Shown piece by piece: positions 10,607 through 48,685 of a stretch of DNA of 64,000 nt (the stretch's first letter is position 1; every line of letters starts with the position of its first letter). Under the pieces are notes generated by a model. That model was not told where the DNA came from. It saw only the letters and a program-made list of their open reading frames with translations, and did no database searches. The position numbers were made by a program, and so were the translations under genes. Source of the DNA: Octopus sinensis. Lineage: Eukaryota. The stretch is taken from positions 1 through 64,000 of the forward strand of contig NC_043013.1 in NCBI RefSeq assembly GCF_006345805.1. The letters are read 5' to 3'.

Positions 10607-12349
10607 AAGTTTTACATGTAATACTGATATGAACTACTAGAGTTACCTGAAACAAAAGATCATCTCAGATGAAGATTGTCTTTGAATTACCTTTCATTGA
10701 ATACTGTTAATAATTATAAGATGAACATGGTTATACTTTCAGGGTGAACTATATAAAATTTGAGTCAATACATTTCTATAATGCTTCTATTTCATTCAGC
10801 CAATTTATAAATATACAGTCCTTTAATAAGTCAGCTGTAAGAAATTTATTTAATAAAATCAAGTCATTCGATTAGAATTTAGAAATACAAGCTACCCAAA
10901 TGGGCAGGGTTCTCAAATGTCATAATTAAAATTCATTGAAATGATACAATTAATGCAGACTTTGCCAAGTGTTATACATCCTGATTACACACCAGAAATC
11001 TAAATAAGATGAATAATGAAAATCTTAATGAGGTGTAAATCTTCTCAAATAAATACAATTTTTTCCTGTGAGTTATGAGTTTGTTGTGACAAAAGTTGAA
11101 TGAATTTTTAAGTGTTTTGAAAGGCAACTGGAGTGTAAAAAGTATCAACTCTAGTATATTATGTAAATTTGTAAAACTATCCAACCTATGCTAATATGCT
11201 ACAGTATAAAGAAAAATCTGATGCAAAATATTGGAAAGTAAAAATAAACCAAAGCCAGGACAATAATTTAATACAAACATAGAAATATATTTGAGAATTT
11301 CAGAATTTTTCTATAATTGTCTCTTTTTTTCTTTAAAAAAAAACATTCCAACACACAGCTAAATAAAATATAAATATGAGAATACCAAGAACCGAACTTC
11401 TGATTAGACTGTTTTGAGATTCTTGTCAAAAAGAAAAAAAGAATTCACATATCAATGGAGAGAAACAGATGTAAAAGGATGGAGGTGTTTCAAGTGGAAA
11501 TAAATATTGAAGATTTGATTGAATGAAATATGAATTGCAAAATCACTTCAAGGCCTTGAAAAATATGGGTAACAAGTTGTTTTCCAAAGATATAAGACAG
11601 TCCAGACAGATTTTCGCAAGCATGAAGACACTCACTCTAATGGACAGATTCATTTGTACCTTAATGTAACATCACACATCCTTCTGAGGAGCTAACACCA
11701 AAGACTCCCTCTTTGTGTAATTCTTGAGAAAATTACATTTCAAGTGGGTTCTGTAGAAGCTGCTCAAACACCAGAGGAAGATTTGAAATCAGCACCATGG
11801 TACTTTCCACGTCACAGAGATGGATGAGGCCATTGAGAGTTAAATGCCATTGTTAAGAATGGTGTACCAACCCCTAGCTGACATGGATAGTTACAACCAC
11901 AGCTTCCTTACACTTGCAGAAACCATTTCACTTCCATAGCCATTACAAAAATATTGAAATTGAAAAATATTTTTGAAATACTCTATGAAAAAAAAAAAGA
12001 AAACACTAGAAATAAAAGAAGAGAAAAATAGTTGAAATATTCAAAATGAATGTTCTGGATTGAGGAATAATGCAAAGAACTGTCTGCTTACTGTGATCCA
12101 ACCCAGAGAGGCACATACTGATTGTTTCAGAACAAATAAACAAAAAATGATGTCTAAAGATTTTTTTGAACAGTTTTAAAATTCTTTAAAAGATAATCTT
12201 AAACTGGACAACTTGTCAAGGCACAAAACCAGGGTCTTTTTTTTTTGTTTGTTTTTTTACAAGCAATACTTGGTGAGAAGATGAAAGAAATGATTCATTA
12301 TCTTTTCTACATGAGATTCACTTATGAAAAAAAAAATCAACAAAAAGAA

Positions 12350-12384
<35 letters not shown>

Positions 12385-14173
12385 TAATAATGATAATAAT
12401 ATTAATAATGAATTTCAGTTAATTTTTCTGTGTGTGTATGACTGTAATGTGTATGTGCATGAGTGCTTACGTATGTATGTACAATTTACTTGTTGAAAAT
12501 CTATTTGGAGTGAAACAGCAAACATTATAAGTTTGATATAAATACACAGATTATGTGAAGTGAAGGCCATCAAGTAGTTTTAAGAACAACTTTGCAATTA
12601 TTACATAATTAACAAATTGTAATTTTGTTGCTCACTAAAGGTTAGAAAAAAAATTTTTTTAAATAATAACAGATTCCCTCTTTGTTAGAAAGAGGGTAAC
12701 AAATTTTTGATAAGACACATAATTTGAAATTTCATTGAATTTCATTTCAAATTTTTTTTTTTTTAATTTTCATTCAAAAGAAAATATGTAAAATTTGTTC
12801 AATATCTAGTTTCAATAATTTTACCACATCATTGGAAGCCTTTGATTTTGATACCGTTTTCTTTTGATTACATAACCCCACCAATTCTCCAAATCTCTAT
12901 CCATTAACTGTGAAATTAATATGGTGTGTGTACAGCAAAGATAGAATAGAGAAAATATATTAATAAGATAGAAATAAGAACATATCCTGTAGACAAATAC
13001 AGGAAGATTTTGTGTATTCTAGCCCATGGAGGATAAAGGATATTAATTATATCTAATTTACTCTAATTTACACAGGAAGACATTATGTTGCTCTAGTCAT
13101 GCAAGCATGAAAATATGGATGCAAAACAGCAGGGAAAAAAATAAATAACCTTCCTTTAATTTATGTAGTAGAAAAATCAGTATTGCTTTGTATGCTTATT
13201 ATAAAGGCGAGGAAATATATTTTGTACTTTTATATAGAAGGGAGAAACTAAGTTATTCTGATTATCTAAATTGTATTGGGTGTTAAAGTGACAGAAATTT
13301 GATGTAAAATATCACTTTTTTTTTTTAGATCAATAATATAAAGTGAAGAGATTGAAACAGAATACTGGCAAAAGAGGGAGGGGTGAGAGATGAATATACT
13401 TCCTTCAATTTTAACATTCCTTCTTTTTATTTTGTAAATGTTTTCTGTTTTCTCTGTAACTAAAGGCACTGAGTTTAGGTTCTGAGTTCTACCTTCAAAT
13501 ATTTATCAAAGACCCACTGTGTGAAGATAATACTGGATTGGGTGAGATATAGAGAGTGAGAAAGAGAAATAGAAAGACTAGCCCTCTGAGATGACAGTCA
13601 GCAAAAACTAAAGAGAAGAAACTTTTTTTTAGTTTTTAAACTTTTTACAAAATTCTGTTTGTTGGGTAATGAAAGGCCAAAACACTACAGCTATAATATC
13701 GTAAAACAAAGCAATTCTATATCAGTTAAAAGCCAAATGATAATAAAATACATTTCAAGTGGCATTTAAGATGCCCAGATCACAAATAGAAGATACTGTT
13801 AAAACACAGCATTGTTTTATATTTTTAAGTATTTTTTTTAATTCTGTCCCCCGTCCCCCCACTTCCTTTTCAAAGGATTTTTAGGTTTCCAATATCTTCA
13901 TAACATTTTTGTCTTGTCTCTCTTTCTCTGTTCTTTCTCTTCCTTTTTTTTTTCTGAAAAAAATTCCATTATTCACAATTCTTTCTTCACTCTGGTTTTA
14001 CATCTCCCAATGATATGAAAGCAACTTTTTATAAATTTGATAATTCAAAGAAGAAAAAAAAAAAGTAAACCAAAATGATAGAGAGAGCGAATGAGAGTGA
14101 GAGAGAGAATGAGAGTGAGAGAGAAAAGCACTAAAAAAAATATTAACTTGCTAAATATTCAAAATGGAAAATG
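10300..14173 (-). other. Probable long 3' UTR of the ZNF gene
   Basis: About 3.9 kb directly after the stop codon with no recognisable SINE/LINE fragment in an otherwise TE-saturated window; U-rich on the minus strand; AATAAA (minus) at 13426-13431 and 10845-10850. Confidence 0.4.
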
Positions 14174-15521
14174 TTATAAGTTTATATACGTGATCATTTC
14201 CTCTTGGTTAGGGGGTGTGGGGTTGGTATAGGGTTGAGGGGGTGCATACATTTGGCTGTTACTGATGTAATCCTGTCTCATGACCATCGTATCCTGGGCA
14301 TAATAAGGCTGTTGTGCATCAACATTGCTCAGGAAATTCTCTTGTTTTCTGTAGGTGAATGACTGGCCATTGTATGTACAAAACTGCTGCGGTGGGACTT
14401 GATTTGCAGGATACAGATTGGTAAATTCCTGCTTCACTTGTACTTCACTTGGGTTTGGATTGGGGAGGTGGTTAGAGTTAGCAGCACTATTGCTATTGGT
14501 GCTGCTATTGCTGCCAAAAGGTTCCAATTGATGGTTTGTTCTATTTAAATTAATCACAACAGGCTTGGTATCCACGTTTGTTTGATTTGGGTATGGTGTT
14601 GGCAAAGACAAAGACACGCTGTTTGTAAGGTTGCAGTTGCTCGGTAACTTGACAGCAACACTTGTGTTAGTGACACCAGAAGATGTGGTGGAAACTAAGT
14701 TGATATCATTTGATATTGAAGAATTGATATCACAGGTGTTAATAGGATTAGGCACTGGCCCAAGGCCATTCTCTGCTATAACACCACCATTATATAAAAG
14801 TGCAGTGTTGCCATCACACATGAGTGCTGCTGGAGCTGGTGGTAACGGTGGTTTGCAGGTAAGGGTGTGCTTCTTAAGTTGCTTTGAATATGAAAAAGAC
14901 TTTTTACAGCTTTTACACTGAAACGGCTGTTCACCTGTATGAGTCCTCTGGTGAACAACCAAATTACTGCTACGAGCAAATGTTTTGTCACAGAAGGAAC
15001 AGCTGAAAGGCTTCTCACCCGTGTGAGTGCGGATGTGTAATGTTAAGTTGTATGTGCGAGGAAATTTCTTTTTACAATATTTGCACTCAAAAGAATTCAC
15101 TTTATGCGACCGAGTGTGTTCCCTTAATTCACTGAAGCAGGTGGCTGTCTTTTCACAGTACTGACACTGATACAGCTTGTCTCGATTGTGCTGGGTTTTG
15201 ATGTGCTGGGTCAGCCCATACAGTCGAGACAGGGTTTTCTTGCAATACTCACAGGTGTAGCGTTTTTCTCCGCTACTATTTGTAGTACAAGCACCACCAA
15301 CAGTGCTAGCGCTGCTACATCGACTGCTATTCAGGTTGTCACACTCAGAAGGGTGTTGCATCTTCATGTGTTGTTGCAGCTCCTCAGAACTATAAAATGT
15401 CTTTTGGCAGTGCTTGCACACTAATAGCTTCGCTTGAAGCTGTTCTGTTTTGGTGTCCAGAAGCTGTGAGAATCCAGGTGGTTGGCCAGCATTTATATCT
15501 GCTGCCATGCGTTGATGGTGG

Positions 15522-15556
<35 letters not shown>

Positions 15557-16579
15557 TGGATGAGTTTGGTGAGGAGGAAGAGGAGGTGGTGGTGGTGGAG
15601 GAGGGGCATGCTGACCAAATTCCAGCTGTCTGGCAGTGTTGCTATCAATTGATTGATTAAAGTCAATTTGGTTTTGAGGCTGAGGGAGATGCTGCAATGT
15701 TTGCGAAAAACTTATCTCTTCGATTTTCGGTTCAACTAGATGCTGCTGCTGCTGCTGTTGTTGTTGTTGCTGTTGCTGTTGTTGTTGCTGGGTTTGGAAA
15801 TCCAAAGACATAGTTTTCACTTGTTCTGGAGAAGCAAAGTCAACCTGGCCAGGTGTTCCCACAGAATTGTTTACCTGTGAAACAAAATCTAATTGTTCGG
15901 TCTTGAGTTTCACTGGTTCATTAAAATTTAATTGTTCCAACTTGTTTTCATTATGCTGAATGAGATCTATCTGTTCAGCGTCTCCCATTGATTGTGCAAA
16001 TCCAAATTGGCTGATTGTTTGGACTTTATCATCCACAGAGACAGACTGGTTAAAGTCAAGCTGCTGTTTGCTTAACTGCTCAAAATCTAAATCAGACTTC
16101 TCGCTCTTCACCATTTCACTGAAGTCAATTTGCTCTTGTTTTACAACGGAACTCAAATTATTTATGTCCTCTGGTTCATTCTTTATTTGAACTGGGAAGG
16201 ACAACTGTTGTGCTGCCACTACATCTAACTGCTCAGGGAATTCAAGAGTTCCTGATTTCAAATCCATTTGATGAGAGAACTCTATATCTAACTTACCAGT
16301 TTGTGATGTGGGAAACTGAATTGTTGCAGTATCATCACCTGTTGGCTGCTGCGGAATAAACATCAGGTGACTCGCATCTGCACCTTGGATTATATGAGTC
16401 TGCTGAGCAAAGTCAAACTGTGTGACATCAATTTGTGGGAACTGTGTTGGTGAGCGCTGCGAAGGTTGTTGAACATAATTCAGCTGACCAACAGTAATGG
16501 ACGTTGGATCTGAGTTTCGTACAAAGTTACTTGCAGTTGGGAATGTCTGTAAGAAAGGTTTTTCAGTTTTAAAAGACAT
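14174..16579 (-). CDS. C2H2 zinc-finger transcription factor, 801 aa, single coding exon; 6 fingers (last is C2HC), polyQ16, polyP, polyH11, long Q-rich N-terminus
   Basis: Intact ORF. Fingers CKHC..HMKMQH, CEYC..HIKTQH, CQYC..HTRSH, CKYC..HIRTH-TGEKP, CSFC..HQRTH-TGEQP, CKSC..HTLTC lie at about 14856-15425. In-frame TGA 10 codons upstream of the ATG and A at -3 (gtcacgATG) support the start. No orthologue recognised. Confidence 0.95.
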
Positions 16580-16705
16580 CGTGACCAGTATTTGTAGCAG
16601 CTGGTTTCACTCATAAGCAGGAACTTATAAAAGAGTTTACACACTGTGGATGATTTCAATGTTGAGACAGCAGCATGAAGTTGGATTCCTGAAATGATAC
16701 AAAAA
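16580..16705 (-). promoter_or_regulatory. 5' UTR portion of the ZNF exon (16580-16688) and its 3' splice acceptor
   Basis: Minus strand reads tctttttgtatcatttcAG|gaatcc, with AG at 16690-16689. This implies one or more upstream non-coding exons. Confidence 0.65.
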
Positions 16706-19700
16706 GATACTTCAGTATCTCAGGTAGAAATAGACAAATGGATATATAACAGACAAATATAAAATTGATCTGGCCAGGCTGAACATAAAACAGGTTGAAC
16801 ATTTTGACCAGGTATGGCTAGTTTAAATGCTAAAGGCCTAAAACATCAATAAATTTCATTCTGTTATCACAGGATAACAATGGAAAATGATCTTGAAATA
16901 ACATTTATTCAAATGCATAGAGAAAATATTTTAAAGATAGGTGATACATCAAGTTTTGAAATCACATTGATAGCTTTAGTATGAGTATTGCTTGTATCAT
17001 TGAAAATTAGACATCTGGATATCCTTGCAATAATAATGTTTCTTATTCTATGCTTCTATGCTAACATGATATAGGACTGTTACTAACCACAGGTATGATA
17101 CACAAGTTAACTGACCATAAAGTCTGACCAACCCTAATGAATGAAACTGCAGGTATGTAATGGTTTGATACAGGTGTAAGTATTCCCTTGGTATAAGTGA
17201 TCCCCTTTTCTTTTTTTTTTTTTCATCCTTATATTTGATAACAATTTAAATAATTCTTATATTCTACCCATTAATTCATACATCCAGCAGGTGTTTTCTG
17301 CTGATCAGATATTCACCTTCACAAACCATATTTTCCATTGTGGATTAAGATTAAGCAAAGAGTAGATGAGACATGCTCTAATAGACAGGTGATATCCAGC
17401 TAAAAACTGAGTATCTTCTTCAATTAACTACAACCTATTATAAATTGCAGGTGACTCAAGAAGTCAGCCGCAATTGATGATTGATTACAGGTGACTCTAG
17501 AAACCCAAAATGTTCACCCAATCTGACAAAACATCAATCAATATGAATGCAACAATCTCATCAACATCAAAAAGACAGGTAAAATTCTCTCTCTCTCTCC
17601 ATGTCTAGCAACAGCATTCTGAATGATAGTTTTGCTGAGTTTATCAATGTAATCAGGTAAATGCTATTTTAAGCGATGGGATACAAGCCAGAGGTTAAGG
17701 TCTTACATTCCTAGCCATATACACAAACCAACAGCATCACTGTAGATGCAATGCAATCAACAAACAAGGGCAGATGTAGTTTGATTTCTAAACAAAATAG
17801 TGATTGAAGTGAATGATTCTCTGGACTTTGCACGGTAAATGTCACAGAATAACAAATGTTGTAATTAAAATGTGGACAATATAGCCCTGAGAATAATCAA
17901 TCACAATAACAATAGATGACAAATGCCTAAAGACAAACTCTTACCACTTCAGTCAGACAACAGAAAAATAGAAAATCACAGTCCAGTTTGTATAAAAACA
18001 TAGAAACGGATACGAATGAACCTAAACTGAAAGCATCTCAGCATCCAGATTCTTCTTGTCAAATGTAATGCTTACATCTAATCACATTGTTTTTAATTAA
18101 TCCCACATTATCCAATAGCTTTGAGATTTCAATGATGAGATTGTTTATTTTTAGAATGACATTGTAGGGTAGGTGTGAGGGGCTAGACCTGGTCAGTTTG
18201 CATAGAAATCGAGTAGAATTTGAGAATCAAATCAACTGTCATAGAATACCAATATATTGGTAAAGATTAATAAGAAGGCACAAAATCAAAATTATGTTTA
18301 TGTTGCAGAGGCCTCTTTAAACATACAACAAAAAGCTAAAACAACACAAAGTGCATTGTGACCAATGATGTTTAACAGCATTCAATAGTCTGGTCGATCA
18401 CATGATAATATGATATATATACTATGTATGTATCACCATCGCCATCATCATTGTTTAACATCCGCTTTCCATGCTGGCATGGGTTGGATGGTTCGAGTGA
18501 GAACTGGCAAGTTGGGAGGCTGTGCCAGGTTCCAATCTGATTTGGCAAGGTTTCTACAGCTGGAGACCCTTCCTAATGCCAACCACTCCAAGAGTGTAGT
18601 GGGCGCTTTTAGTGTATAAGGTTACATGTGTGTGCAGCTGTGTGAATGTTTAAATTCTGTGGCTACACATGAAACCATTTGAGCAGCACAAAGCAATGTA
18701 TTTGTGACACACCCAGTTAAGAAACCATGCTGTGTAGCTTTGAATTCTCAATGCCTTACTTGTAATACAAATAAGGGATTTTTGTAATAAAAATAAGAAT
18801 TGATGACAGACAATGAGACAAACTGTAAAACACTAGATCAAAATACGTCTCCATCCGACTCCTGCAAACATAGCAATCTGATGTTAAGCAAAAAAATATA
18901 TAAAAATATATTGGTCCATGCTTGCATGGATGAGAGGCATTAAAGGATTATCATGATATATCTCTTTTCTTTTTTACTTGTTTCCCTCATTAGACTGTGT
19001 CAATGCTGGGGCACTGCACTGGAGGGTCTTTGGTGGAATGAATCAACCCCAGTGCTTTTTTTTTTCCTACTAGTTGTCAAGCAGCAGCAGGGAACAAATA
19101 CGGACGGGGACATACACACACACAACAGGCTTCTTTCAGTTTCCATCTACCAAATTCACTTACAAAGCTTTGATCACAAAACACCACTCGGTTGGAAAGC
19201 AAGCTTCTTACAACACAGCCATTCCTGTGTGTGGGAAGTACACACACGCACATACACAAATACATACATTCACATATATTAAGCTGTATGTACACACACA
19301 CACACATATATATATGTTTATACACACAAACATATATTTTGTACACATAATATATCTGTGTTACATAATCATGAACAGATTTACAAGAAATGCTATGTAA
19401 TTATATACATGCACACGTGATCGAAATTGCACAGGTGTGTTTGTTTTTAAGGAGACTTGCATATTTGGATCCTGCAATTAATACACATATTTATGCACGG
19501 GTATAAAAACGTGTAAAGTAACAAACACGTACAAGCAGTATATATATATATATATGTTCCAAAATGTACACCCCACACACACACACGTATACACAATTAC
19601 ATAATTGAGAACTTCTCAGAATGTGTGCACATGTAGGAATTAATGTTAATACAAATGTACAGACACATAAGACATGCACAGAAAATATATATTTTCATAA

Positions 19701-19907
19701 ACAGCCCCACCAACACTACCATCATTATCACCATCATCATGTAGGTGTGTGTGTGTTTGAAGAGAGTATTTTGTGTACATGTAACGAGATGTATGTATAC
19801 ATGTATGAAGGTATCTGAGTACATTAGAATGTGTGTGTATGTATGTATGAATGTGTGTGTAAATAAATATATATATATATGTATGTATATATATGATGAT
19901 GATGATC

Positions 19908-20716
19908 ATCATCATCATCATCGTTTAACGTCCGTTCTCCATGCTAGCATGGGTTGGACGGTTCGACCAGGGTTCTGGGAAGCCAGAAGGCTGCACCAGG
20001 CTCCAGTCTAATCTGGCAATGTTTCTACAGCTGGATGCCCTTCCTAACGCCAACCACTCCGTGAGTGTAGTGGGTGCTTTTTAACGTGCCACCTGCACAG
20101 GTGCCAGGCGGTGGCAACGGCCACGGTCAGATTGGTGTATTTTATGTGCCACCGGCACGGAAGCCAGTCGAGGCGGTGCTGGCATCGGCCACGAGTCGGA
20201 TAGTGCTTTTTTTTTACGTACCACCAGACCAGGATCCTGGCTGGTTCAATTCGATTCGATTTCGCTTGCCCCAACATGTCTTCACAAGCAAAGGGGTTGG
20301 CATGGGTGCCTGTCGTACGGTCGCATTGGAGTATTTTACGTGCCACGGCCACGAGTCGGATAGTGCTTTTTACGTACCACCAGGCCAGGGATCCTGGCTG
20401 GTTCAATTCGGTTTCGATTTCGATTGCCCCAACATGTCTTCGCAAGCATGGGGGGTGGCATGGGTGTCTGTCGTCAGGTGAGGTTCTATATCGACTTCGC
20501 TTGCCTCAACCGGTCTTTGCGTCCAGGGAGGAAAGGCATTCATAAGTGGGCTGGGCTCACTTGTCCTGCCTGGTCTTCTCACGTACAGAATATTTCCAAA
20601 GGTCTCGGTTGCTGGTCATTCCTCAGTGAGGCCTAAAGTTCGAAGGTCGTGCTTCACCACCTCGTCCCAGGTTTTCCTGGGTCTACCTCTTCCACGGGTT
20701 CCCTCAACTGCTAGGG
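19908..20716 (-). mobile_element. 5'-truncated RTE-clade LINE: RT C-terminus, 3' UTR with internal VNTR, (GAT)n tail
   Basis: 20716-20620 minus = SLAVEGTRGRGRPRKTWDEVVKHDLRTLGLTE (RTE-type RGRPRKTW motif). The 3' end ggaagggcatccagctgtagaaac...gtccaacccatgctagcatgg..gttaaacgatgatg recurs many times in the window. Confidence 0.85.
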
Positions 20717-20784
20717 AAGAGTGATGATGATATATATATATATATATATATATAATGTATATATATATATATGGTGATGATAAC

Positions 20785-21400
20785 ATCATCATCATTGTTT
20801 AACGTCCACTTTCTGCGCTAGCACGGGTTGGACGGTTCGACCGGGGTCTGGGAAGCCAGGGCCTGCACTAGGCTCCAGTCTGATCTGGCAGTATTTCTAC
20901 AGCTGGATGCCCTTCCTAACGCCAACCACTCCGCAAGTGTAGTGGGTGCTTTTTACGTGCCACCTGCACAGGTGCCAGGGGGGTCTAGCATCGGCCACAA
21001 TCGGTTGGTGCTTTTAACGTGCCACTGGCACGGAAGCCAGCCAAGGCGGCGCTGGCATCGGCCACGTTCGGATGGTGCTTTTTTATGTGCCACCGGCACA
21101 GAAGCCAGTCGAGGCGGCGCTGGCAACGGCCACGTTCGGATGGCACTTTTTATGTGCCACCGGCACAGAAGCCAGTCGAGGCGGCGCTGGCATCGGCCGC
21201 GTTCGGATGGTGCTTTTTATGTGCCACCGGCACAGAAGCCAGTGGAGGCGGCGCTGGCAACGGCCACGTTCAGATGGTGCTTTTTATGTGCCACCGGCAC
21301 AGGTATCAAAACTACTATTTCCATTGATATTTGCACTTGACTCAACAGGTCTCCTCAAGCACAGCGAGATGTTCTGGGATCTAAGGACATATAAGGACAT
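20785..21400 (-). mobile_element. RTE 3' UTR fragment carrying about 5 copies of a ~67-bp VNTR unit
   Basis: Repeated tttttatgtgccaccggcacagaagccagtcgaggcggcgctggcaacggccacgttcggatggtgc inside the same RTE tail context. Confidence 0.8.
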
Positions 21401-24462: not shown

Positions 24463-27400
24463 TTTTATGTCCCACTGGCACTGGAGCCAGTCAGGTGGCA
24501 CTGGAACCAGCCAGGTGGCACTGGCATCAACTACGCTCGAACGGTGCTTTTTATGTGCCACTGGCACTGGAGCCAATCAGGTGGCACTGGCATCAACTAT
24601 GCTCGAACGGTGCTTTTTATGTGGCACTGGCACTGGAGCCAGTCAGGTGGCACTGGCATCAACTATGCTCGAACGGTGCTTTTCATGTGCCACTGGCACT
24701 GGAGCCAGTCAGGTGGCACTGGCATCAACTATGCTCGAACGGTGCTTTTCATGTGCCACTGGCACTGGAGCCAGTCAGGTGGCACTGGCATCAACTACGC
24801 TCGAACGGTGCTTTTTATGTGCCACTGGCACTGGAGCCAATCAGGTGGCACTGGCATCAACTATGCTCGAACGGTGCTTTTTATGTGCCACTGGCCCTGG
24901 AGCCAGTCAGGTGGCACTGGCATCAACTACGCTCGAACGGTGCTTTTTATGTGTCACTGGCACTGGAGCCAGTCAGGTGGCACTGGCTCAACTACGCTCG
25001 AACGGTGCTTTTCATGTGCCACTGGCACTGGAGCCAGTCAGGTGGCACTGGCATCAACTACGCTCGAACAGTGCTTTTTATGTGTCACTGGCACTGGAGC
25101 CAGTCAGGTGGTGGCACTGGCATCAACTACGCTCGAACGGTGCTTTTCATGTGCCACTGGCACTGGAGCCAGTCAGGTGGCACTGGCATCAACTACGCTC
25201 GAACGGTGCTTTTTATGTGCCACTGGCACTGGAGCCAGTCAGGTGGCACTGGCATCAACTACGCTCGAACGGTGCTTTTTATGTGTCACTGGCACTGGAG
25301 CCAGTCAGGTGGCACTGGCATCAACTACGCTCGAACGGTGCTTTTCATGTGCCACTGGCACTGGAGCCAGTCAGGTGGCACTGGCATCAACTACGCTCGA
25401 ACGGTGCTTTTCATGTGCCACTGGCACTGGAGCCAGTCAGGTGGCACTGGCATCAACTACGCTCGAACGGTGCTTTTCATGTGCCACTGGCACTGGAGCC
25501 AGTCAGGTGGCACTGGCATCAACTACGCTCGAACGGTGCTTTTCATGTGCCACTGGCACTGGAGCCAGTCAGGTGGCACTGGCATCAACTACGCTCGAAC
25601 GGTGCTTTTTATGTGCCACTGGCACTGGAGCCAGTCAGGTGGCACTGGCATCAACTACGCTCGAACGGTGCTTTTTATGTGTCACTGGCACTGGAGCCAG
25701 TCAGGTGGCACTGGCATCAACTACGCTCGAACGGTGCTTTTCATGTGCCACTGGCACTGGAGCCAGTCAGGTGGGACTGGCATCAACTACGCTCGAACGG
25801 TGCTTTTTATGTGCCACTGGCACTGGAGCCAGTCAGGTGGCACTGGCATCAACTACGCTCGAACGGTGCTTTTTATGTGTCACTGGCACTGGAGCCAGTC
25901 AGGTGGCACTGGCATCAACTACGCTCGAACGGTGCTTTTTATGTGTCACTGGCACTGGAGCCAGTCAGGTGGCACTGGCATCAACTACGCTCGAACGGTG
26001 CTTTTTATGTCCCACTGGCACTGGAGCCAGTCAGGTGGCACTGGCATCAACTACGCTCGAACGGTGCTTTTTATGTGTCACTGGCACTGGAGCCAGTCAG
26101 GTGGAACTGGCATCAACTATGCTCGAACGGTGCTTTTTATGTGTCACTGGCACTGGAGCCAGTCAGGTGGCACTGGCATCAACTACGCTCGAACGGTGCT
26201 TTTTATGTGTCACTGGCACTGGAGCCAGTCAGGTGGCACTGGCATCAACTACGCTCGAACGGTGCTTTTTATGTGTCACTGGCACTGGAGCCAGTCAGGT
26301 GGCACTGGCATCAACTACGCTCGAACGGTGCTTTTTATGTGTCACTGGCACTGGAGCCAGTCAGGTGGCACTGGCATCAACTACGCTCGAACGGTGCTTT
26401 TTATGTGTCACTGGCACTGGAGCTGCCTGTAAGCTGGCAGCCAGTCAGGTGGTACTGGATCACTACGCTCGAACGGTGCTTTTTATGTGTCACTGGCACT
26501 GGAGCCAGTCAGGTGGCACTGGCATCAACTACGCTCGAACGGTGCTTTTTATGTGTCACTGGCACTGGAGCCAGTCAGGTGGCACTGGCATCAACTACGC
26601 TCGAACGGTGCTTTTTATGTGTCACTGGCACTGGAGCCAGTCAGGTGGCACTGGCATCAACTACGCTCGAACGGTGCTTTTTATGTGTCACTGGCACTGG
26701 AGCCAGTCAGGTGGCACTGGCATCAACTACGCTCGAACGGTGCTTTTTATGTGCCACTGGCACGGAGCCAGTCAGGTGGCACTGGCATCAACTACGCTCG
26801 AACGGTGCTTTTCATGTGCACTGGCACTGGAGCCAGTCAGGTGGCACTGGCATCAACTACGCTCGAACGGTGCTTTTTATGTGTCACTGGCACTGGAGCC
26901 AGTCAGGTGGCACTGGCATCACTACGCTCGAACGGTGCTTTTTTATGTCACTGGCACTGGAGCCAGTCAGGTGGCACTGGCATCAACTACGCTCGAACGG
27001 TGCTTTTTATGTGTCACTGGCACTGGAGCCAGTCAGGTGGCACTGGCATCAACTACGCTCGAACGGTGCTTTTTATGTGTCACTGGCACTGGAGCCAGTC
27101 AGGTGGCACTGGCATCAACTACGCTCGAACGTGCTTTTTATGTGTCACTGGCACTGGAGCCAGTCAGGTGGCACTGGCATCAACTACGCTCGAACGGTGC
27201 TTTTTATGTGCCACTGGCACTGGAGCCAGTCAGGTGGCACTGGCATCAACTACGCTCGAACGGTGCTTTTTATGTGTCACTGGCACTGGAGCCAGTCAGG
27301 TGGCACTGGCATCAACTACGCTCGAACGGTGCTTTTTATGTGTCACTGGCACTGGAGCCAGTCAGGTGGCACTGGCATCAACTACGCTCGAACGGTGCTT

Positions 27401-30400
27401 TTTATTGTGCCACTGGCACTGGAGCCAGTCAGGTGGCACTGGCATCAACTACGCTCGAACGGTGCTTTTTATGTGTCACTGGCACTGGAGCCAGTCAGGT
27501 GCACTGGCATCAACTACGCTCGAACGGTGCTTTTTATGTGTCACTGGCACTGGAGCCAGTCAGGTGGCACTGGCATCAACTACGCTCGAACGGTGCTTTT
27601 TATGTGTCACTGGCACTGGAGCCAGTCAGGTGGCACTGGCATCAACTACGCTCGAACGGTGCTTTTTATGTGCCACTGGCACTGGAGCCAGTCAGGTGGC
27701 ACTGGCATCAACTACGCTCGAACGGTGCTTTTTATGTGTCACTGGCACTGGAGCCAGTCAGGTGGCACTGGCATCACTACGCTCGAACGGTGCTTTTTAT
27801 GTGCCACTGGCACTGGAGCCAGTCAGGTGGCACTGGCATCAACTACGCTCGAACGGTGCTTTTTATGTGCACTGGCACTGGAGCCAGTCAGGTGGCACTG
27901 GCATCAACTACGCTCGAACGGTGCTTTTTATGTGTCACTGGCACTGGAGCCAGTCAGGTGGCACTGGCATCAACTACGCTCGAACGGTGCTTTTATGTGT
28001 CACTGGCACTGGAGCCAGTCAGGTGGCACTGGCATCAACTACGCTCGAACGGTGCTTTTTATGTGTCACTGGCACTGGAGCCAGTCAGGTGGCACTGGCA
28101 TCAACTACGCTCGAACGGTGCTTTTTATGTGCCACTGGCACTGGAGCCAGTCAGGTGGCACTGGCATCAACTACGCTCGAACGGTGCTTTTTATGTGTCA
28201 CTGGCACTGGAGCCAGTCAGGTGGCACTGGCATCAACTACGCTCGAACGGTGCTTTTTATGTGTCACTGGCACTGGAGCCAGTCAGGTGGCACATGGCAT
28301 CAACTACGCTCGAACGGTGCTTTTTATGTGTCACTGGCACTGGAGCCAGTCAGGTGGCACTGGCATCAACTACGCTCGAACGGTGCTTTTTATGTGTCAC
28401 TGCACTGGAGCCAGTCAGGTGGCACTGGCATCACCTACGCTCGAACGGTGCTTTTTATGTGTCACTGGCACTGGAGCCAGTCAGGTGGCACTGGCATCAA
28501 CTACGCTCGAACGGTGCTTTTTATGTGCCACTGGCACTGGAGCCAGTCAGGTGGCACTGGCATCAACTACGCTCGAACGGTGCTTTTTATGTGTCACTGG
28601 CACTGGAGCCAGTCAGGTGGCACTGGCATCAACTACGCTCGAACGGTGCTTTTTATGTGTCACTGGCACTGGAGCCAGTCAGGTGGCACTGGCATCAACT
28701 ACGCTCGAACGGTGCTTTTCATGTGCCACTGGCACTGGAGCCAGTCAGGTGGCACTGGCATCAACTACGCTCGAACGGTGCTTTTTATGTGTCACTGGCA
28801 CTGGAGCCAGTCAGGTGGCACTGGCATCAACTACGCTCGAACGGTGCTTTTTATGTGTCACTGGCACTGGAGCCAGTCAGGTGGCACTGGCATCAACTAC
28901 GCTCGAACGGTGCTTTTTATGTGTCACTGGCACTGGAGCCAGTCAGGTGGCACTGGCATCAACTACGCTCGAACGGTGCTTTTTATGTGTCACTGGCACT
29001 GGAGCCAGTCAGGTGGCACTGGCATCAACTACGCTCGAACGGTGCTTTTTATGTGTCACTGGCACTGGAGCCAGTCAGGTGGCACTGGCATCAACTACGC
29101 TCGAACGGTGCTTTTTATGTGCCACTGGCACTGGAGCCGTCAGGTGGCACTGGCATCAACTACGCTCGAACGGTGCTTTTTATGTGTCACTGGCACTTGG
29201 AGCCAGTCAGGTGCACTGGCATCAACTACGCTCGAACGGTGCTTTTTATGTGTCACTGGCACTGGAGCCAGTCAGGTGGCACTGGCATCAACTACGCTCG
29301 AACGTGCTTTTTCATGTGCCACTGGCACTGGAGCCAGTCAGGTGGCACTGGCATCAACTACGCTCGAACGGTTGCTTTTTATGTGTCACTGGCACTGGAG
29401 CCAGTCAGGTGGCACTGGCATCAACTACGCTCGAACGGTGCTTTTTATGTGGTCACTGGCACTGGAGCCAGTCAGGTGGCACTGGCATCAACTAATACGC
29501 TCGAACGGTGCTTTTTTTGTGTCACTGGCACTGGAGCCAGTCAGGTGGCACTGGCATCAACTACGCTCGAACGGTGCTTTTTATGTGCCACTGGCACTGG
29601 AGCCAGTCAGTGGCACTGGCATCAACTACGCTCGAACGGTGCTTTTTATGTGTCACTGGCACTGGAGCCAGTCAGGGGGCACTGGCATCAACTACGCTCG
29701 AACGGTTGCTTTATGTGTCACTGGCACTGGAGCCAGTCAGGTGGCACTGGCATCAACTACGCTCGAACGGTGCTTTTTATGTGTCACTGGCACTGGAGCC
29801 AGTCAGGTGGCACTGGCATCAATAACACGCTCGAACGGTGCTTTTTATGTGCCACTGGCACTGGAGCCAGTCAGGTGGCACTGGCATCAATCAATACGCT
29901 CGAACGGTGCTTTTTATGTGTCACTGGCACTGGAGCCAGTCAGGTGGCCACTGGCATCAACTACGCTCGAACGGTGCTTTTTATGTGTCACTGGCACTGG
30001 AGCCAGTCAGGTGGCACTGGCATCAACATACGCTCGACCGGTGCTTTTTATGTGTCACTGGCACTGGAGCCAGTCAGGTGCACTGGGCCTCAACTACGCT
30101 CGAACGGTGCTTTTTATGTGTCACTGGCACTGGAGCCAGTCAGGTGGCACTGGCATCAACTACGCTCGAACGGTGCTTTTTATGTGCCACTGGCACTGGA
30201 GCCAGTCAGGTGGCACTGGCATCAACTACGCTCGAACGGTGCTTTTTATGGTGTCACTGGCACTGGAGCCAGTCAGGTGGCACTGGCATCAACTACGCTC
30301 GAACGGTGCTTTTTATGTGTCACTGGCACTGGAGCCAGTCAGGTGGCACTGGCATCAACTACGCTCGAACGGTGCTTTTTATGTGTCACTGGCACTGGAG

Positions 30401-30932
30401 CCAGTCAGGTGGCACTGGCATCAACTACGCTCGAACGGTGCTTTTTATGTGCCACTGGCACTGGAGCCAGTCAGGTGGCACTGGCATCAACTACGCTCGA
30501 ACGGTGCTTTTTATGTGTCACTGGCACTGGAGCCAGTCAGGTGGCACTGGCATCAACTACGCTCGAACGGTGCTTTTTATGTGCCACTGGCACTGGAGCC
30601 AGTCAGGTGGCACTGGCATCAACTACGCTCGAACGGTGCTTTTTATGTGTCACTGGCACTGGAGCCAGTCAGGTGGCACTGGCATCAACTACGCTCGAAC
30701 GGTGCTTTTCATGTGCCACTGGCACTGGAGCCAGTCAGGTGGCACTGGCATCAACTACGCTCGAACAGTGCTTTTTATGTGCCACTGGCACGGGAGCCAG
30801 TCAGGTGGCACTGGCATCAACTACGCTCGAACGGTGCTTTTTATGTGCCACTGGCACTGGAGCCAGTCAGGTGGCACTGGCATCAACTACGCTCGAACGG
30901 TGCTTTTTATGTGCCACTGGCACGGGAGCCAG
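24463..30932. repeat. 66-bp tandem array, about 98 copies
   Basis: Unit gtg(c/t)cactggcactggagccagtcaggtggcactggcatcaactacgctcgaacggtgctttttat; period confirmed (24541 to 24607) and 22-aa periodicity in the ORF track. Confidence 0.99.
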
Positions 30933-31162
30933 TCATTTGTTTGCATTCCCGTAACTTAGCGGTTCAGGAAAAGAAACCAACAGAATAAATAAATGACTTA
31001 AAAATAGAAAGTGTTGGAGTCAATTTGCTCGACGAAAACTCTTCGAGGCAGTGCCCCAGCATGGCCAGAGTTCAATTGTTAGAAAAGAAAAGCAATAGAT
31101 GAAAGATATATAACATTAACAGGTTCATGATGTGTTTGTGTATAAAATTATATATATAGGTG

Positions 31163-31193
<31 letters not shown>

Positions 31194-31824
31194 ACGTGCG
31201 TGCACACGCAAGCATACATGCAAGGTGTTGTGTATAATTACCTGTACTGTGATATACACCTGTTCACTTTTGTACATAGCTTATGTTACTGAAATAGAGA
31301 ATTGTCTAAGAAAGACAGGAGAAATAAAAGTGTGTAGGAGAGTGAGTGCAGGAAGAACAGACTGGAATTTTTTGTAAATTTAACTTCGTGTATGTGTATG
31401 TGTGTGTGTGTGTGTGTGAAATATGTATGTTTTAATATTTTGTATTGAATGTGTCAAGTACAGGATGTATGCGGGTGCCCACACATGTGGAAGTATTTGG
31501 GACTAAGAGTGCGTGCGTGTATTTGTAAGAATGACAGGTTTCGCTATGCTAAACATAGGATATGTATGCCAGGGTGTTTACAAATGTGTGAGTCACAGGA
31601 TGTGTATGTGTGTGTAGATACACATATGTGTGTGTGTATACACACACATGCATGAGTTTGTATGTGGGAGGTGGATAGTATATGATTACTGTATATTCCA
31701 TTTATACTCACAGCATACTAAGGATGTGTGTACATGTATATATATTTACTGTGTATTTCCTGTACACCAATCACACATTCAATGACTGAGAAAGTTTGGA
31801 GAGGGCATATATATATATATATAT

Positions 31825-31862
<38 letters not shown>

Positions 31863-33469
31863 GAGAGAGATGCTTTATATATCATACATTCCCACAATAT
31901 ACTCAGAGTGACAATATGTTTATGCATACTTACATATATATATATATATATATATTCATACATATGTACATATATTTACACACACACACACACACACACA
32001 CATATGGAAAGAGATAATGCATCTATAAACAGAAACACACTTATTATTCTAATCTTTTGCAATGACATTCTAAAATCAAACGCCAGTTTTGCTGTCCAAT
32101 TCACACAACCCTCACTTACACACGCATACACACACATGGACCTACACAAAAATGCACACACACATAGATTTTGAACTTATGTAGTAACACACAAACCTTC
32201 TTATCCATACACACACACACACACAGAGAAACACATGTGCGTGTGTGTGTGTGCACGTGCCATTTTATACACCAACACATTACCATTTTGTAAAAATAAA
32301 GAGAGTCGCAAAAATTAATACAATTAGTTGCAACCACTGACCCACACAAACATACAGTCATGCGTACATTCGTAAGTGGATTTGGTAGACAGAATCTAAA
32401 GGACGCCTGTTGCATGCGTGCATGCATGTTACTCTCTCCTTCACTTAATATAACAGTAGCAAATGAATGTCACCATCGTGCAAGCAGTGTCCTCTGTTTC
32501 CAATCTTCTGTGAAAACATGTCTGGTCTGGACATATATTACGTTGCTTGAAAACAGGGTAAGGGTTGGTGACAGGAAAAACATCCAGCTGTAGAAAAACC
32601 TGCCTCAATAAATTCTGTCCAACCCATGCAAGAATGGAAAAACAGATGTTAAACAGTGATGCTGATGATGATGATGCTATAAAGGCGTGTGGCGTAATGG
32701 TTAGGGTATTCAGTTTGCAAACGTCAGGTCATGACTTCATTTCCCAGTGGTGCACTGTCTCCTTCAACAAAACGCTTTATTTCACATTGCCCCAGTCCAT
32801 TCAGCTGGCAAAAAAGTGCTGTTCCTGTAATTTAAGGGGCCAGCCTTGTCACATTCTGTATCATGTCGAATCTCCCCAGGAACTACATTAAAGGTATGTG
32901 TGTCCATGGAGTGCTCAGCTACTTGCACATTAATTTCATATGCAGGCTGTTCCGTTGATCAGATCAGCTGAAAGCTTCATTCTCGTAACTACCAGTTACA
33001 CATAAACACACAAACACACATAAATGTGTGCTTTTGTGAATGTATGCATGCAATAATGTGTCAATGAATATGCATTCAAAGACCTTTGGAATAAAAAATG
33101 CCCCTTACTTCTAAAACAGGTCAGAGGGCAAGACTGGAAGAGTATCTGGCTGGAAAACTCTGCCTCAAATTCCCATCTAAATGTATCCTAACCTGGCAAA
33201 GAATAGTGGCAGTAGGTGGGGTGGAGGGCATGTAACCACATGTGTATTTTTCTTGGACTTTTTTCCTCTTCTCCAGATTTTTCCTTTCTCTTTCTAACAA
33301 AGAGCCATGCTCAAAACATTACAAACCCACTCTTTTTTCTATCTTATACTGAGCATCAACCTAATACATTCCATGTGTACATCCTTTTGACTTTTGTTGT
33401 TTTGTTCATCACCATCATCATTTTTCCATACTGCCAATGAGAAAGACTGTTTGACTGAATAATAATATG

Positions 33470-43094: not shown

Positions 43095-45760
43095 ACTGTA
43101 ATTGTGTCACCGCAACCAACTCTGATGGATTAGATCTAGGATATGTAGATAAACAGTTGAAGAACATGTGGTGATTATGTACCCTCGCACATAAGACCAC
43201 CACAATTGATGGACCCTGGTTGGCCACCACTGCCACCAAGCCACCCATCATACCAACACCAACGCCATTTCTACTAATGAATATAAGAGGCTTGCTGCAG
43301 AACAGCAGTAAATGCAAAATTGAGCACCTGAAGAATCTTTCTGCATGTAATCAAGCTATATGCATTGCACTTACAGAAACACATCTATCTGCAGACATAA
43401 ATGATGCGGAGATACCCCATACCAATGTATGCTGTCTTCTGTACAGACAGAAGAAAAAGATGTCACTGTGGAGTTGCAATGTACATCCGAGAAGATGTCA
43501 CACCATTAACCCTGTTATTGAACTGGAACACGGTGTGTGACACACTCATGGTACATCTAAAGCAACTTGATATAGTGATATGCACACTATATTGCCCACC
43601 TGATGCCTCAAATCATGATGGAAAATTTGAGGAAAGCCTCAGTGTGATAAAGGAAGTACTAACACAATTGGATCAACATATTCCAGATGGGTGACTTCAA
43701 CTTCCCCAACATCAGGTGTCCTGAGGGCAATATAACCCCACGAATGACACACTAAGAGCGAAATCAAGCAGAATCTCTACTTGATCTTACAAAAATGCTA
43801 TTCATGGAGCAGATCATCCTCTCTCCAACCAGGCACAAAAATATCCTGGACCTCTGTTTTACAAACAATGTGGAAATTATCCACAATGTAAATATATCAC
43901 TGACAATATTCTCAAACCATAACATGATAGAACTGAAAATGTATGGCCCAGAATTAACTAAAGATAAACTCCACACAGATGGCACTCAAACCCTATCCAG
44001 CCTAAATTTCTATAAGGCTGACTGGAAGTCACTTGAAAAACAGAAACTTTAGCAGGACAGGCCTAAAAGCCTCTCTATGCAAGACATAGATATGAAACTC
44101 AATTAATTCATATCAATAATGCAAGCCATATGCATTAAATACATCCGAGAGAAGGGAGCCAATACACAAAAAAACATCATTCCCCAAGACAGGAGAATAC
44201 TCATGCAGCGGAGAATAAAGATCTCGAATCATTTCAACAAACACATCAATGACAGTGGGAAATCCCAGCTGACAGAGATGGAAAATAAACTCAAAATCTC
44301 CCATGGAAAAGAAAGAGAGGAAAATCCTAAAGCTTTCTACATGTTGGCAAAGGAGTCTGCCTCAGTATGCTATAAGATAGGGCCACTATTTGGCAAAAAT
44401 GGCTCACTAAATGCAGACCCAGGGAAGATAAGTGAAGCACTAAATAAACAATTCCAAAGTGTTTTCACTTTTTCCCTCTGGAAAATATGCAAATAAACAA
44501 GCCGAAGGAGTTTTTCAATGTAATTAATCTATTTCGAAAAGAGGCAACCATCGATTACATCAACATAACAGAAGAGGATGTAATATTGGCCATTGATGAG
44601 ATGAGATCGAACTCAGCAACAGGCCCAGATGGACACCCAGCTGTTCAACAAGGTGGGAGAGTGCTGCATGATTTTCCAAAGGGCAGGAGTCAGACAGCTC
44701 TAGCCAATGATGCTCACTCTAAAGAGGAACCAATTCTCAGTGAAGTCCCACAAAGAGCTGTACTGGGGCCACTACTATTTGTGGTGGCCCCCTCAGACAT
44801 GCCATCTACAGTACAGTCAGCCAATCTGACCAGTTATGCTAATGACACCAAAGTATTGCAGGCAGTTAGGAACCCAGAGGACATCATAAAACTGCAGAAA
44901 GACCTGAACGAAATATACAAATGGGCTTACAAAAATAACATGCAGTTCAAGGCTATGAAATTTCAGGCACTCCACTATTGGTCAAACATCAGGCTAAAAT
45001 CGGAATACAGTGGACCAGAAGGTAATACTATCCCAGAGTCAAAGTCGGTGCATAACCTGAGGGTTCACATGAGCAATGATGCAACATTCCATGTGCATAT
45101 TACCAAGATGGCAACACTGTGCAGGCGAGTGGCTGGACGGATTCTGAGAACATTCAAGAACCAGGAAAAGGGAGGGGCCCTGCTACCCCTACGGAGTACT
45201 TTTGTTCTCAGCTGCCTGGACTACTGCTCTCAACTATGGTCCTCAGAGAGAGTGAAACAAATTGTGGAACTCGAAGCAATACACAAAGAAGATTGACACG
45301 ATGCAAAAGATGGGCTACTGGGAGAGGCTAAGGGAGCTGAGTCTTTATTTCCTGGAGAGAAGAAGAGAGAGATATGCAGTGATATATATATTTGGAAGAT
45401 CTTAGAGGGTTTAGCTCCCAATTTTGGAATTGACAGCTATACCAATCCTCAAACTAGACAGCACTGCTTCACACCAAAGATCCCATCTTCCCCATCTAAA
45501 ATAAGGACTCAGTACTGAAATAGTCTGGGTTTCGAGGGCCTGCAATTGTTCAACATCCTTCTAGGCAACCTTAGAGATCTACATGGTATTGATGTGGAAG
45601 TTTTCTGGACAGGTTTCTCTCTGTGGTACCAGATGAACCCACGTCACGGCAGGAGACGCAGAGAAGTGTGACTCCATCCAGAAGCCGGGAACCACACCAA
45701 ATAACTACAGGTGATGCACCAGCATCACCTCAGCTCTCGGCTGAAACCAGTAAAAAATAA
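43095..45760 (+). mobile_element. Decayed CR1-group LINE (APE + RT) with an internal RT deletion
   Basis: APE motifs NIRGL, LTETHL, GDFNFP, ILDLCFTN, NFYKADW; RT motifs SEVPQRAVLGPLLF, YANDTK, LQKDL..WA..NNMQF, LDYCSQLWS; many stops and frameshifts. The exact clade is uncertain. Confidence 0.9.
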
Positions 45761-47859: not shown

Positions 47860-48685
47860 TTATTAATATTTCTAGAGGGTTGTTATTGAAAATATCAACA
47901 TTAGCAGATAATTTAGATAATCTAAATGAAATATTCTTTACTAAGTTTTTAGTAATTGCTCCAGGATGATTACTAAATTTGCTAATGTACTTAAGATTGG
48001 TCAACGGTTTATGATATGGGAGGTAAGAGTCACTGTGTAAATTAAGTGTAATATCTAAAAAGTTGGCCTTCGTCATATCGTCATCAAAAACGATTTTTAA
48101 GCCCATTCTACTGAAAAAATTAACTAAACTATTCTTAACTTTTTGTACCTTTTGGTTGGAAACATTTTGGAGGTAAAGTAAACAATCATCACGATATAGA
48201 CCTCCATAAATGTTAGGGAACTCTTCAGCCATTTCAAAAAGAATATATATACAGACCACATCAGCTATCTGTGCTGAATCAGCACTTCCCATTGGTATAT
48301 CGAAACTATCTGGTGTGTCTTTACGGACCCACAACTTATCATCAAATTTAATAATAGATCTTCTGGCTGCCAACACAACATTAATTTCTTCTCGGGTGAG
48401 ACCAGCTTTGTTATGAGCAAGCCAAAGTGCCTTATTAAGTACTATTGGATTGATAGATGAATAAAAATTGGAAATATCAAACTGGATAAACTTAGTACTC
48501 ACCTTATTGTTAATAGAACTAAACCAGTCAACTACTTCAAACGAATTAGTCCATAAACTAAGTTTTAATGTTTTGATTAAATTAGGAATATATTTATCTA
48601 GTATATTTTTACTAAGGATACCGATGTCAGAGCTAGAAGGGCAGATAAGCCTTAATGATGGGTTAGTAAAAAAATTTCTATCCAT
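47860..48685 (-). mobile_element. Penelope-like element reverse transcriptase fragment (Neptune-like, endonuclease C-terminal)
   Basis: PSLRLICP, FIQFDISNFYSSI, FDIPMGSADSAQ, GLYRDDCL, NFLDITLNL, YHKP..SNHP; open frame but truncated at both ends. Subclade name is from memory. Confidence 0.92.

What the first reader, a model, noticed from the sequence alone, without database searches (positions are those of the whole stretch)
16721..17659. Strand-biased cluster of 12 CAGGT motifs immediately upstream of the ZNF coding exon
Seen: CAGGT on + at 16721, 16791, 16809, 17090, 17150, 17171, 17288, 17386, 17448, 17488, 17576 and 17654 (6 CAGGTA, 5 CAGGTG, 1 CAGGTT), and none found on the other strand in this interval. 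My hand estimate is about 0.5 expected per strand at ~35% GC. There is no tandem periodicity; two sites lie in a small repeat fragment. Known: CAGGTG/CAGGTA is bound by Snail/Scratch/ZEB-class factors, CAGGTAG is the Drosophila Zelda site, and CAG|GT is also the splice-donor/U1 consensus. Inferred: a homotypic intronic enhancer or silencer, or U1/recursive-splice sites of an antisense transcript. Autoregulation is possible but weakly supported (fingers 4-5 have R-1/N+3, which predicts NAG triplets).
Basis: partly seen in the sequence, partly recalled or inferred. Interest (0 to 1): 0.7.

Follow-up and report, generated by a model that had tools for sequence, protein, structure and literature searches.

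The report
Same-strand CAGGTR cluster in ZNF intron
Twelve copies of the short DNA word CAGGT, all on one strand, really do sit in the last kilobase of the intron in front of a cephalopod zinc-finger gene, and they are neither chance nor a worn-out repeat; but they look more like a lineage-specific cluster of protein-binding sites than splice signals, and no function could be shown.

Summary
There are 12 CAGGT on the + strand (16721-17658) and none on the - strand. Expected counts are 0.4-1.0 per strand. Eleven of the 12 are CAGGTR.

It is the only strong 5-mer cluster in the window that is not a tandem or simple repeat. The family-wise chance estimate is about 3e-5 per 64-kb window.

The zinc-finger ORF lies on the - strand (14174-16579). 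A 3' splice acceptor conserved in four cephalopod loci puts the exon start at 16688. The cluster therefore occupies the last ~1 kb of the 5'UTR intron, on the antisense strand.

- **Not a decayed repeat:** site flanks are no more alike than random positions. One-mismatch variants are not enriched. There is no periodicity and no second copy.
- **Poor splice-donor/U1 array:** there is no AAGGT, only one GTRAG, and no excess of matches at +4 to +6. Only one site has an upstream pyrimidine tract.
- **Not conserved:** the Argonauta and decapodiform orthologues lack the cluster.

Best reading, at moderate-low confidence: a lineage-specific homotypic cluster of ZEB/Snail-type CAGGTA/CAGGTG sites. The uniform orientation is unexplained. 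It may reflect a splicing constraint of the host gene. A neutral origin remains a serious rival. Interest is modest.

The parts
16721..17658 (+). Cluster of 12 CAGGT (11 CAGGTR), all on the + strand, which is antisense to the ZNF gene. On the gene's sense strand the motif reads YACCTG.
16721..16813 (+). Proximal sub-cluster of 3 sites (16721 CAGGTAG, 16791 CAGGTT, 16809 CAGGTA), 32-124 nt from the acceptor.
17090..17658 (+). Distal sub-cluster of 9 sites in 569 bp.
17437..17502 (+). Local 40-bp duplication that carries two of the sites (CAGGTGACTC twice). This is the only clear flank similarity among the sites.
   Evidence: family D1, 81% over 26 nt.
16689..16691 (-). Conserved 3' splice acceptor (cag) with a pyrimidine tract. 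The intron ends here and the coding exon starts at 16688.
   Evidence: Searches show the same ...tttcag|GA... junction in the window, Argonauta (L001) and two decapodiform loci (L002, L003). DNA conservation with Argonauta stops at 16705.
16580..16688 (-). 5'UTR part of the coding exon, conserved with Argonauta.
   Evidence: 77% over 129 nt.
14174..16579 (-). Single-exon ORF of 801 aa. It is a C2H2 zinc-finger protein with Q-, P- and H-rich tracts.
   Evidence: One search gives the ORF. One search gives the Pfam zf-C2H2 matches. One search shows 76% identity to the Argonauta hians protein P0001.

Best explanation
This is a lineage-specific homotypic cluster of CAGGTR sites. CAGGTG is the E2-box and CAGGTA the Z-box, both recognised by ZEB-class zinc-finger repressors; Snail/Scratch-class factors recognise the CAGGTG subset. 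The cluster sits in the last ~1 kb of the 5'UTR intron of a conserved cephalopod C2H2 zinc-finger gene, directly in front of the exon that carries the ATG.

Proposed mechanism (inferred, not shown): the array works at the DNA level as a multi-site platform that recruits such a repressor close to the gene's main exon, acting as an intronic silencer or tissue-restriction module.

Proposed reason for the uniform orientation (inferred): the motif is also the 5' splice-site core. A copy in the sense orientation would place a CAG|GUR donor-like sequence in the ZNF pre-mRNA just upstream of the real acceptor. Only antisense-oriented copies would then be tolerated.

Shown here: the cluster, its statistics, its intronic position, its sharp 6-mer core with unrelated flanks, and its absence from distant orthologues. 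Not shown: binding, regulatory activity, and the orientation filter.
For: The motif is sharp. All 12 sites are exact CAGGT and 11 of 12 are followed by a purine. There is no information in the 20 nt on either side. Six CAGGTA plus five CAGGTG is exactly the ZEB site set; Burk et al. 2008 (PMC2396950) describe 2 Z-boxes plus 4 E-boxes within about 1 kb at miR-200c/141.

C at the first position is required: 12 of 14 + strand AGGT have it, and AAGGT occurs 0 times. That fits a protein-DNA core and not a U1 site.

One-mismatch variants are not enriched (8 against about 11 expected). Flank identity is 0.276 against 0.281 for random positions. Gapped flank alignments score no better than controls, and there is no autocorrelation. 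TRF finds nothing at score 30. The copies therefore did not survive passively from a repeat.

The density is far above chance. The position next to a conserved acceptor and 5'UTR of a transcription-factor gene is established. The sense strand of the interval has no CAGGT and only one weak donor-like site, which is compatible with the orientation-filter idea.
Against: There is no binding or expression data. TF-site clusters normally show no orientation bias, and 12:0 has P 5e-4. My explanation of that bias is an untested inference; zero sense-strand copies is not itself significant, since 0.4-0.9 are expected.

The cluster is absent from the orthologous intron of Argonauta (no ACCTG in the 2 kb before the acceptor) and from the decapodiform loci. 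By contrast, the 3'UTR and 5'UTR are alignable with Argonauta.

Positions flanking the core do not significantly match the extended ZEB or Snail preferences. I know those preferences from memory only.

If the first stage scanned a whole genome, about one cluster of this strength is expected by chance under the window-rate model.
Confidence: 0.35

Rival explanations
1. The cluster has no function. It is a statistical extreme of a very large scan, or the by-product of an unknown neutral process in this lineage.
For: It is not conserved in Argonauta or the decapodiform orthologues. My extrapolation gives about 3e-5 per 64-kb window, which is roughly one per 2-3 Gb genome. Two of the 12 sites come from one local duplication. 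No ORF, RNA family or structural element accompanies the cluster.
Against: With the local composition the Poisson P is 5e-14, and 2000 dinucleotide shuffles of the interval never exceeded 4. The purine at position 6 (P 0.004) and the 12:0 orientation (P 5e-4) are additional and were not part of the ascertainment. No comparable non-repeat cluster exists in the rest of the window or in 45 kb of orthologous cephalopod loci.
Confidence: 0.33
2. The cluster is an array of U1 snRNP-binding, 5' splice-site-like sequences in a + strand RNA antisense to the ZNF gene. The sites would be used as donors, or would serve for telescripting or chromatin retention of a non-coding transcript.
For: Strict strand specificity is natural for an RNA element. 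CAGGUR gives 6 contiguous pairs with the U1 5' end. Seven of 12 sites match at least 7 of 9 positions of CAGGUAAGU. Clustered U1 motifs that tether RNAs to chromatin are documented (bioRxiv 10.1101/310433).
Against: Enrichment is confined to CAGGT. AAGGT occurs 0 times, GTRAG once, and G at +5 in only 3 of 12 sites. Matches at +4 to +6 are 13 of 36 against about 10 expected. No site reaches 6 bits in a rough donor matrix. In the cited study every one of the 7 nt GGUGAGU mattered. There is no PAS asymmetry: AATAAA occurs once on each strand. No + strand transcript is known.
Confidence: 0.12
3. The cluster is a sense-strand RNA element. Twelve YACCUG motifs in the last kilobase of the ZNF pre-mRNA intron would bind an RNA-binding protein, or pair with donor sequences, to modulate use of the downstream acceptor.
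For: This explains the strand specificity and the position 32-970 nt upstream of a conserved acceptor. On the sense strand the core is flanked by pyrimidines: Y before it in 11 of 12 sites and Y after it in 9 of 12.
Against: I know of no factor that recognises YACCUG. Six-nucleotide pairing is weak. The orthologous introns lack the motif although the acceptor is conserved.
Confidence: 0.07
4. The interval is a decayed tandem repeat or transposable-element fragment whose unit carried CAGGTR. It might be related to the nearby 66-bp satellite, which has one CAGGTG per unit on the same strand.
For: A satellite with same-strand CAGGTG lies 7 kb away. Two sites lie in a 40-bp duplication. Octopod introns are rich in repeats.
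Against: Flank identity and gapped flank scores are at or below control values. One-mismatch variants are not in excess. There is no periodicity. The interval resembles neither satellite beyond shuffled controls. There is no second copy in the window or in L001-L004. No target-site duplication flanks the T-run at 17211.
Confidence: 0.08

Closest known systems
ZEB/Snail E2-box and Z-box clusters, for example the miR-200c/141 promoter (Burk et al. 2008, PMC2396950)
   Same: Both have a mix of CAGGTA and CAGGTG cores at high density within about 1 kb of regulatory DNA next to a regulator gene.
   Different: This cluster has twice as many sites, all in one orientation, in an intron, and it is not conserved. 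The miR-200c Z-boxes are conserved from fish to human. No binding is shown here.
U1-recognition motif clusters in chromatin-retained RNAs and the U1-PAS axis (Yin et al., bioRxiv 10.1101/310433)
   Same: Both are strand-specific clusters of sequences complementary to the U1 5' end.
   Different: The known U1 motifs need the intronic half (GGUGAGU). Here only the CAGGUR half is enriched, and no transcript is known on that strand.
Su(Hw) site array of the gypsy insulator (from my own knowledge, not tested)
   Same: Both have about 12 copies of a short zinc-finger-protein core in the same orientation, separated by unrelated AT-rich spacers.
   Different: The motif is different and the gypsy array is more compact (about 350 bp). 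The gypsy array is part of a transposon, and no transposon context was found here.
Recursive splice sites / ratchet points ((Y)nAG|GTAAGT)
   Same: Both contain the CAG|GT junction sequence inside a long intron.
   Different: Only 1 of 12 sites (17288) has an upstream pyrimidine tract. The GTAAGT half is missing, and the sites are antisense to the only known gene.
Zelda TAGteam (CAGGTAG) clusters
   Same: They share the CAGGTA core.
   Different: Only 1 of 12 sites is CAGGTAG. To my knowledge Zelda is confined to insects and crustaceans.

Membership tests
Homotypic ZEB/Snail-type site cluster (cis-regulatory module) | Core CAGGTG or CAGGTA | tested here: met
   11 of 12 sites: 6 CAGGTA and 5 CAGGTG.
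Homotypic ZEB/Snail-type site cluster (cis-regulatory module) | Site density well above background, not produced by a repeat | tested here: met
   12 sites against 0.4-1.0 expected. Flanks are unrelated.
Homotypic ZEB/Snail-type site cluster (cis-regulatory module) | Occupancy by a ZEB, Snail or Scratch protein and an effect on transcription | not testable with these tools
   No ChIP, ATAC or reporter data are available.
Homotypic ZEB/Snail-type site cluster (cis-regulatory module) | Evolutionary conservation of the sites | tested here: not met
   The cluster is absent in Argonauta and in two decapodiform loci. No closer species could be obtained.
Homotypic ZEB/Snail-type site cluster (cis-regulatory module) | Sites found in either orientation, as usual for TF clusters | tested here: not met
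   Orientation is 12:0, P 5e-4. This needs an extra explanation.
5' splice sites / U1 binding sites | GU at +1 and +2 with a purine at +3 | tested here: met
   11 of 12 sites.
5' splice sites / U1 binding sites | Complementarity to U1 at +4 to +6, especially G at +5 | tested here: not met
   G at +5 in 3 of 12 sites. Matches at +4 to +6 are 13 of 36 against about 10 expected. GTRAG occurs once.
5' splice sites / U1 binding sites | Position -3 tolerant (A about as frequent as C) | tested here: not met
   AAGGT 0, CAGGT 12.
5' splice sites / U1 binding sites | A transcript on the motif strand | not testable with these tools
   No RNA data. No + strand ORF or RNA family was found.
Recursive splice sites | Pyrimidine tract and AG directly before GTAAGT | tested here: not met
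   The upstream 20 nt are not pyrimidine-rich. Only site 17288 has this layout.
Zelda TAGteam | Heptamer CAGGTAG | tested here: not met
   1 of 12 sites.
Decayed tandem or dispersed repeat | Residual similarity of the flanks, degenerate copies, periodicity | tested here: not met
Decayed tandem or dispersed repeat | Many copies elsewhere in the genome | tested here: inconclusive
   No copy in the 64-kb window or in 51 kb of orthologous loci. The source genome itself could not be searched.

The most novel reading that the evidence does not exclude
The array is a functional, recently evolved repressor-binding platform. Its strict orientation would be imposed by the host gene's splicing: a transcription-factor motif that coincides with the splice-donor core can accumulate inside an intron only on the antisense strand. 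If this holds generally, intronic ZEB/Snail-type sites would be orientation-biased with respect to transcription genome-wide. That would be a simple, testable interaction between the cis-regulatory code and the splicing code.
Probability: 0.12. Interest if true: 0.55.

Novelty: new member of a known kind. Interest (0 to 1): 0.3.

Why it matters
If functional, this would be a young, unusually dense and strictly oriented repressor-site array controlling a conserved cephalopod zinc-finger transcription factor. It would also give a clean case for asking how a DNA motif that doubles as a splice-donor core is accommodated inside an intron. If it is not functional, it is a useful calibration point: even a cluster with P of about 1e-10, sharp edges and unrelated flanks can be lineage-specific and without detectable consequence.

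Tried and rejected
- **Decayed repeat or satellite relative: rejected.**
- **Dispersed copies:** none in the window or in L001-L004.
- **Strong donor array or recursive sites: rejected.**
- **Zelda sites: rejected.** Only 1 of 12 sites is CAGGTAG.
- **GATA co-enrichment:** GATA occurs 16 times on + against 3.7 expected. This is not exceptional, because other 1-kb bins of the window hold more GATA/TATC.
- **Non-coding RNA or ORF in the interval:** none found.
- **Conserved upstream exon 1:** the only upstream matches to Argonauta are dispersed repeats.
- **Closer orthologues:** a look-up of the exact window protein found nothing. A search with the N-terminal 263 aa returned nothing, although the Argonauta protein is about 80% identical there. 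This is a limitation of the index, not evidence of absence.
- **Autoregulation:** by the recognition code as I know it, fingers 4-5 (R at -1, N at +3) predict NAG NAG, which does not spell CAGGT.
- **Literature:** a search for CAGGTA together with octopus found nothing relevant.

Full report
**1. The observation**

There is no - strand hit between 16337 and 18187. Six sites are CAGGTA, five are CAGGTG and one is CAGGTT.

The interval has 32% G+C. Expected counts per strand are:
- 0.43 from base composition;
- 0.60 from dinucleotide shuffles of the interval itself, where the largest of 2000 shuffles was 4;
- 0.85-0.96 from the rest of the window with satellites masked.

I scanned all 1024 strand-specific 5-mers in 939-bp frames. 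Every cluster that ranks above this one lies in a microsatellite or satellite. In 120 order-3 Markov simulations of 57 kb, the best cluster P had a median of 1e-5 and never fell below 8e-8. The observed value is 5e-10. I extrapolate a family-wise chance of about 3e-5 per window. That is small, but not negligible if tens of thousands of windows were read.

Two features that were not part of the ascertainment add support. The orientation is 12:0 (P 5e-4), and position 6 is a purine in 11 of 12 sites (P 0.004).

**2. Where the cluster lies**

The only convincing gene nearby is a single 801-aa ORF on the - strand (14174-16579) that encodes a C2H2 zinc-finger protein. It is 76% identical over its full length to a protein of Argonauta hians. 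It is about 40% identical to two proteins from other assemblies, which I take to be decapodiform cephalopods.

I fetched the DNA around these orthologues. In all four loci the sequence about 110 nt upstream of the ATG reads pyrimidine tract, then cag, then GA, followed by a conserved 5'UTR. The DNA alignment between the window and Argonauta runs through the ORF and 5'UTR and stops at 16705.

The exon therefore begins at 16688. The twelve sites occupy the last 32-970 nt of the preceding intron, on the strand antisense to the gene. The position of exon 1 could not be established, because the only upstream matches to Argonauta are dispersed repeats.

**3. Is it a worn-out repeat?**

No test supports this.
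- Ungapped identity of the 20-nt flanks among the twelve sites is 0.276. For random positions in the same interval it is 0.281 +/- 0.011.
- Gapped local alignments of 40-nt flanks score slightly below control values, and the interval shows no autocorrelation peak.
- TRF at its lowest threshold finds nothing relevant.
- One-mismatch variants of CAGGT are not in excess: 8 on + against about 11 expected. A decaying repeat should leave many.
- The interval has no second copy in the window or in the orthologous loci.
- It resembles neither the 66-bp satellite at 24.5-30.9 kb nor its 67-bp relative beyond shuffled controls. Both satellites carry the related core on the same strand.
- No target-site duplication flanks the T-run at 17211.

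The one exception is a local 40-bp duplication that accounts for two sites. The source genome itself could not be searched, so a dispersed family is not formally excluded.

**4. Splice donors or U1 sites?**

The first five bases plus the purine give six contiguous pairs with the U1 5' end. Seven of twelve sites match at least 7 of 9 positions of CAGGUAAGU. However, all of that signal sits in the ascertained half of the motif.
- At +4 to +6 there are 13 matches in 36 positions, against about 10 expected.
- G at +5 occurs in 3 of 12 sites.
- GTRAG occurs once.
- No site reaches 6 bits in a rough donor matrix.
- Selection for U1 binding should also enrich AAGGTR and GTAAGT-type sites. AAGGT occurs zero times, while 12 of 14 AGGT carry C in front.
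- The upstream 20 nt are not pyrimidine-rich. Only site 17288 has the layout of a recursive site.
- AATAAA occurs once on each strand.

In the published U1-retention element, each of the seven bases GGUGAGU mattered (bioRxiv 10.1101/310433). The U1/donor reading is weakened but not excluded.

**5. A protein-binding core?**

The pattern is an invariant 5-mer, a purine after it, a required C at the first position, and no information elsewhere. That is what a short protein-DNA core looks like. CAGGTA (Z-box) plus CAGGTG (E2-box) is the site set of ZEB factors, and Snail factors take the E-box subset. A mix of two Z-boxes and four E-boxes within about 1 kb controls miR-200c/141 (PMC2396950).

This is a resemblance, not a demonstration. 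No binding data exist. Extended preferences could not be tested rigorously. TF clusters are not normally orientation-biased.

**6. Conservation**

In Argonauta the 2 kb before the acceptor contain no ACCTG on the gene strand, and the next 4 kb contain one. The decapodiform loci have one or two. The Argonauta intron is instead filled with GT-rich microsatellites. All intronic sequence is unalignable at this distance. In contrast, more than 2 kb of 3'UTR blocks are alignable at 66-85%.

The cluster is therefore lineage-specific, or was lost elsewhere. Closer octopods could not be obtained.

**7. Synthesis**

Shown:
- a real, dense, strand-pure cluster of CAGGTR with unrelated flanks;
- its position in the terminal kilobase of the 5'UTR intron of a conserved zinc-finger gene;
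- its absence from distant orthologues.

Inferred:
- It most likely acts at the DNA level as a homotypic ZEB/Snail-type repressor platform (confidence about 0.35).
- The uniform orientation may arise because sense-oriented copies would put donor-like CAG|GUR sequences into the host pre-mRNA just before its acceptor.

Rival explanations:
- a neutral extreme or by-product (0.33);
- a U1-type array in an unknown antisense RNA (0.12);
- a sense-strand YACCUG RNA element (0.07);
- an unrecognised repeat (0.08).

The uniform orientation remains the one feature that no reading explains without an added assumption.

**8. Verdict**

Nothing here shows function. I rate it a new member of a known kind, of modest interest, and cheap to resolve with a genome-wide BLAST and an alignment to congeneric octopods.

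Noticed in passing
24496-30935 and 20945-21302: A 66-bp satellite of about 97 units that are 96-97% alike, with one CAGGTG per unit on the + strand. It produces spurious ORFs of over 2000 aa. A related 67-bp array of 5.4 units lies 3 kb upstream. The unit contains CAGGTGGCAC, which from memory resembles part of the CTCF core motif; I did not test this.
   Followed up: partly
18432-18599, 19905-20061, 20784-20933: A dispersed repeat of about 160 bp with many copies in the Argonauta locus L001. This is an old SINE-like family shared by distant octopods.
   Followed up: partly
12103-14314: More than 2 kb of blocks downstream of the ZNF stop codon align with Argonauta at 66-85%. This is an unusually well conserved 3'UTR, given that the introns are unalignable.
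   Followed up: no
15500-15800 (- strand ORF, aa 264-355): The polyQ tract (17 against 6 residues), polyP tract and polyH tract are longer in the window protein than in the Argonauta orthologue.
   Followed up: no
17200-17292 (+): A T-run is followed by an AG-free stretch and then ccAG|CAG|GTG. This is the only one of the 12 sites with a recursive-splice-like layout on the + strand.
   Followed up: no
44487-45296 (+) and 47834-48685 (-): Two ORFs with weak reverse-transcriptase (RVT_1) matches below the Pfam threshold. They are degraded retroelement fragments.
   Followed up: partly
31071-31997 and 19262-19895: Sub-threshold Rfam matches to mir-297, mir-466 and snoRNA models fall on TG/TA low-complexity sequence and are not genes.
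   Followed up: yes
L001 1-10000 (Argonauta hians): The orthologous upstream region is almost entirely microsatellite and minisatellite (GT, GTG, AC, TC and GTGGTA arrays). It includes 24-28 TAGGTG within a GT-rich array 2.4-3.2 kb upstream of the ATG, on the gene strand.
   Followed up: partly
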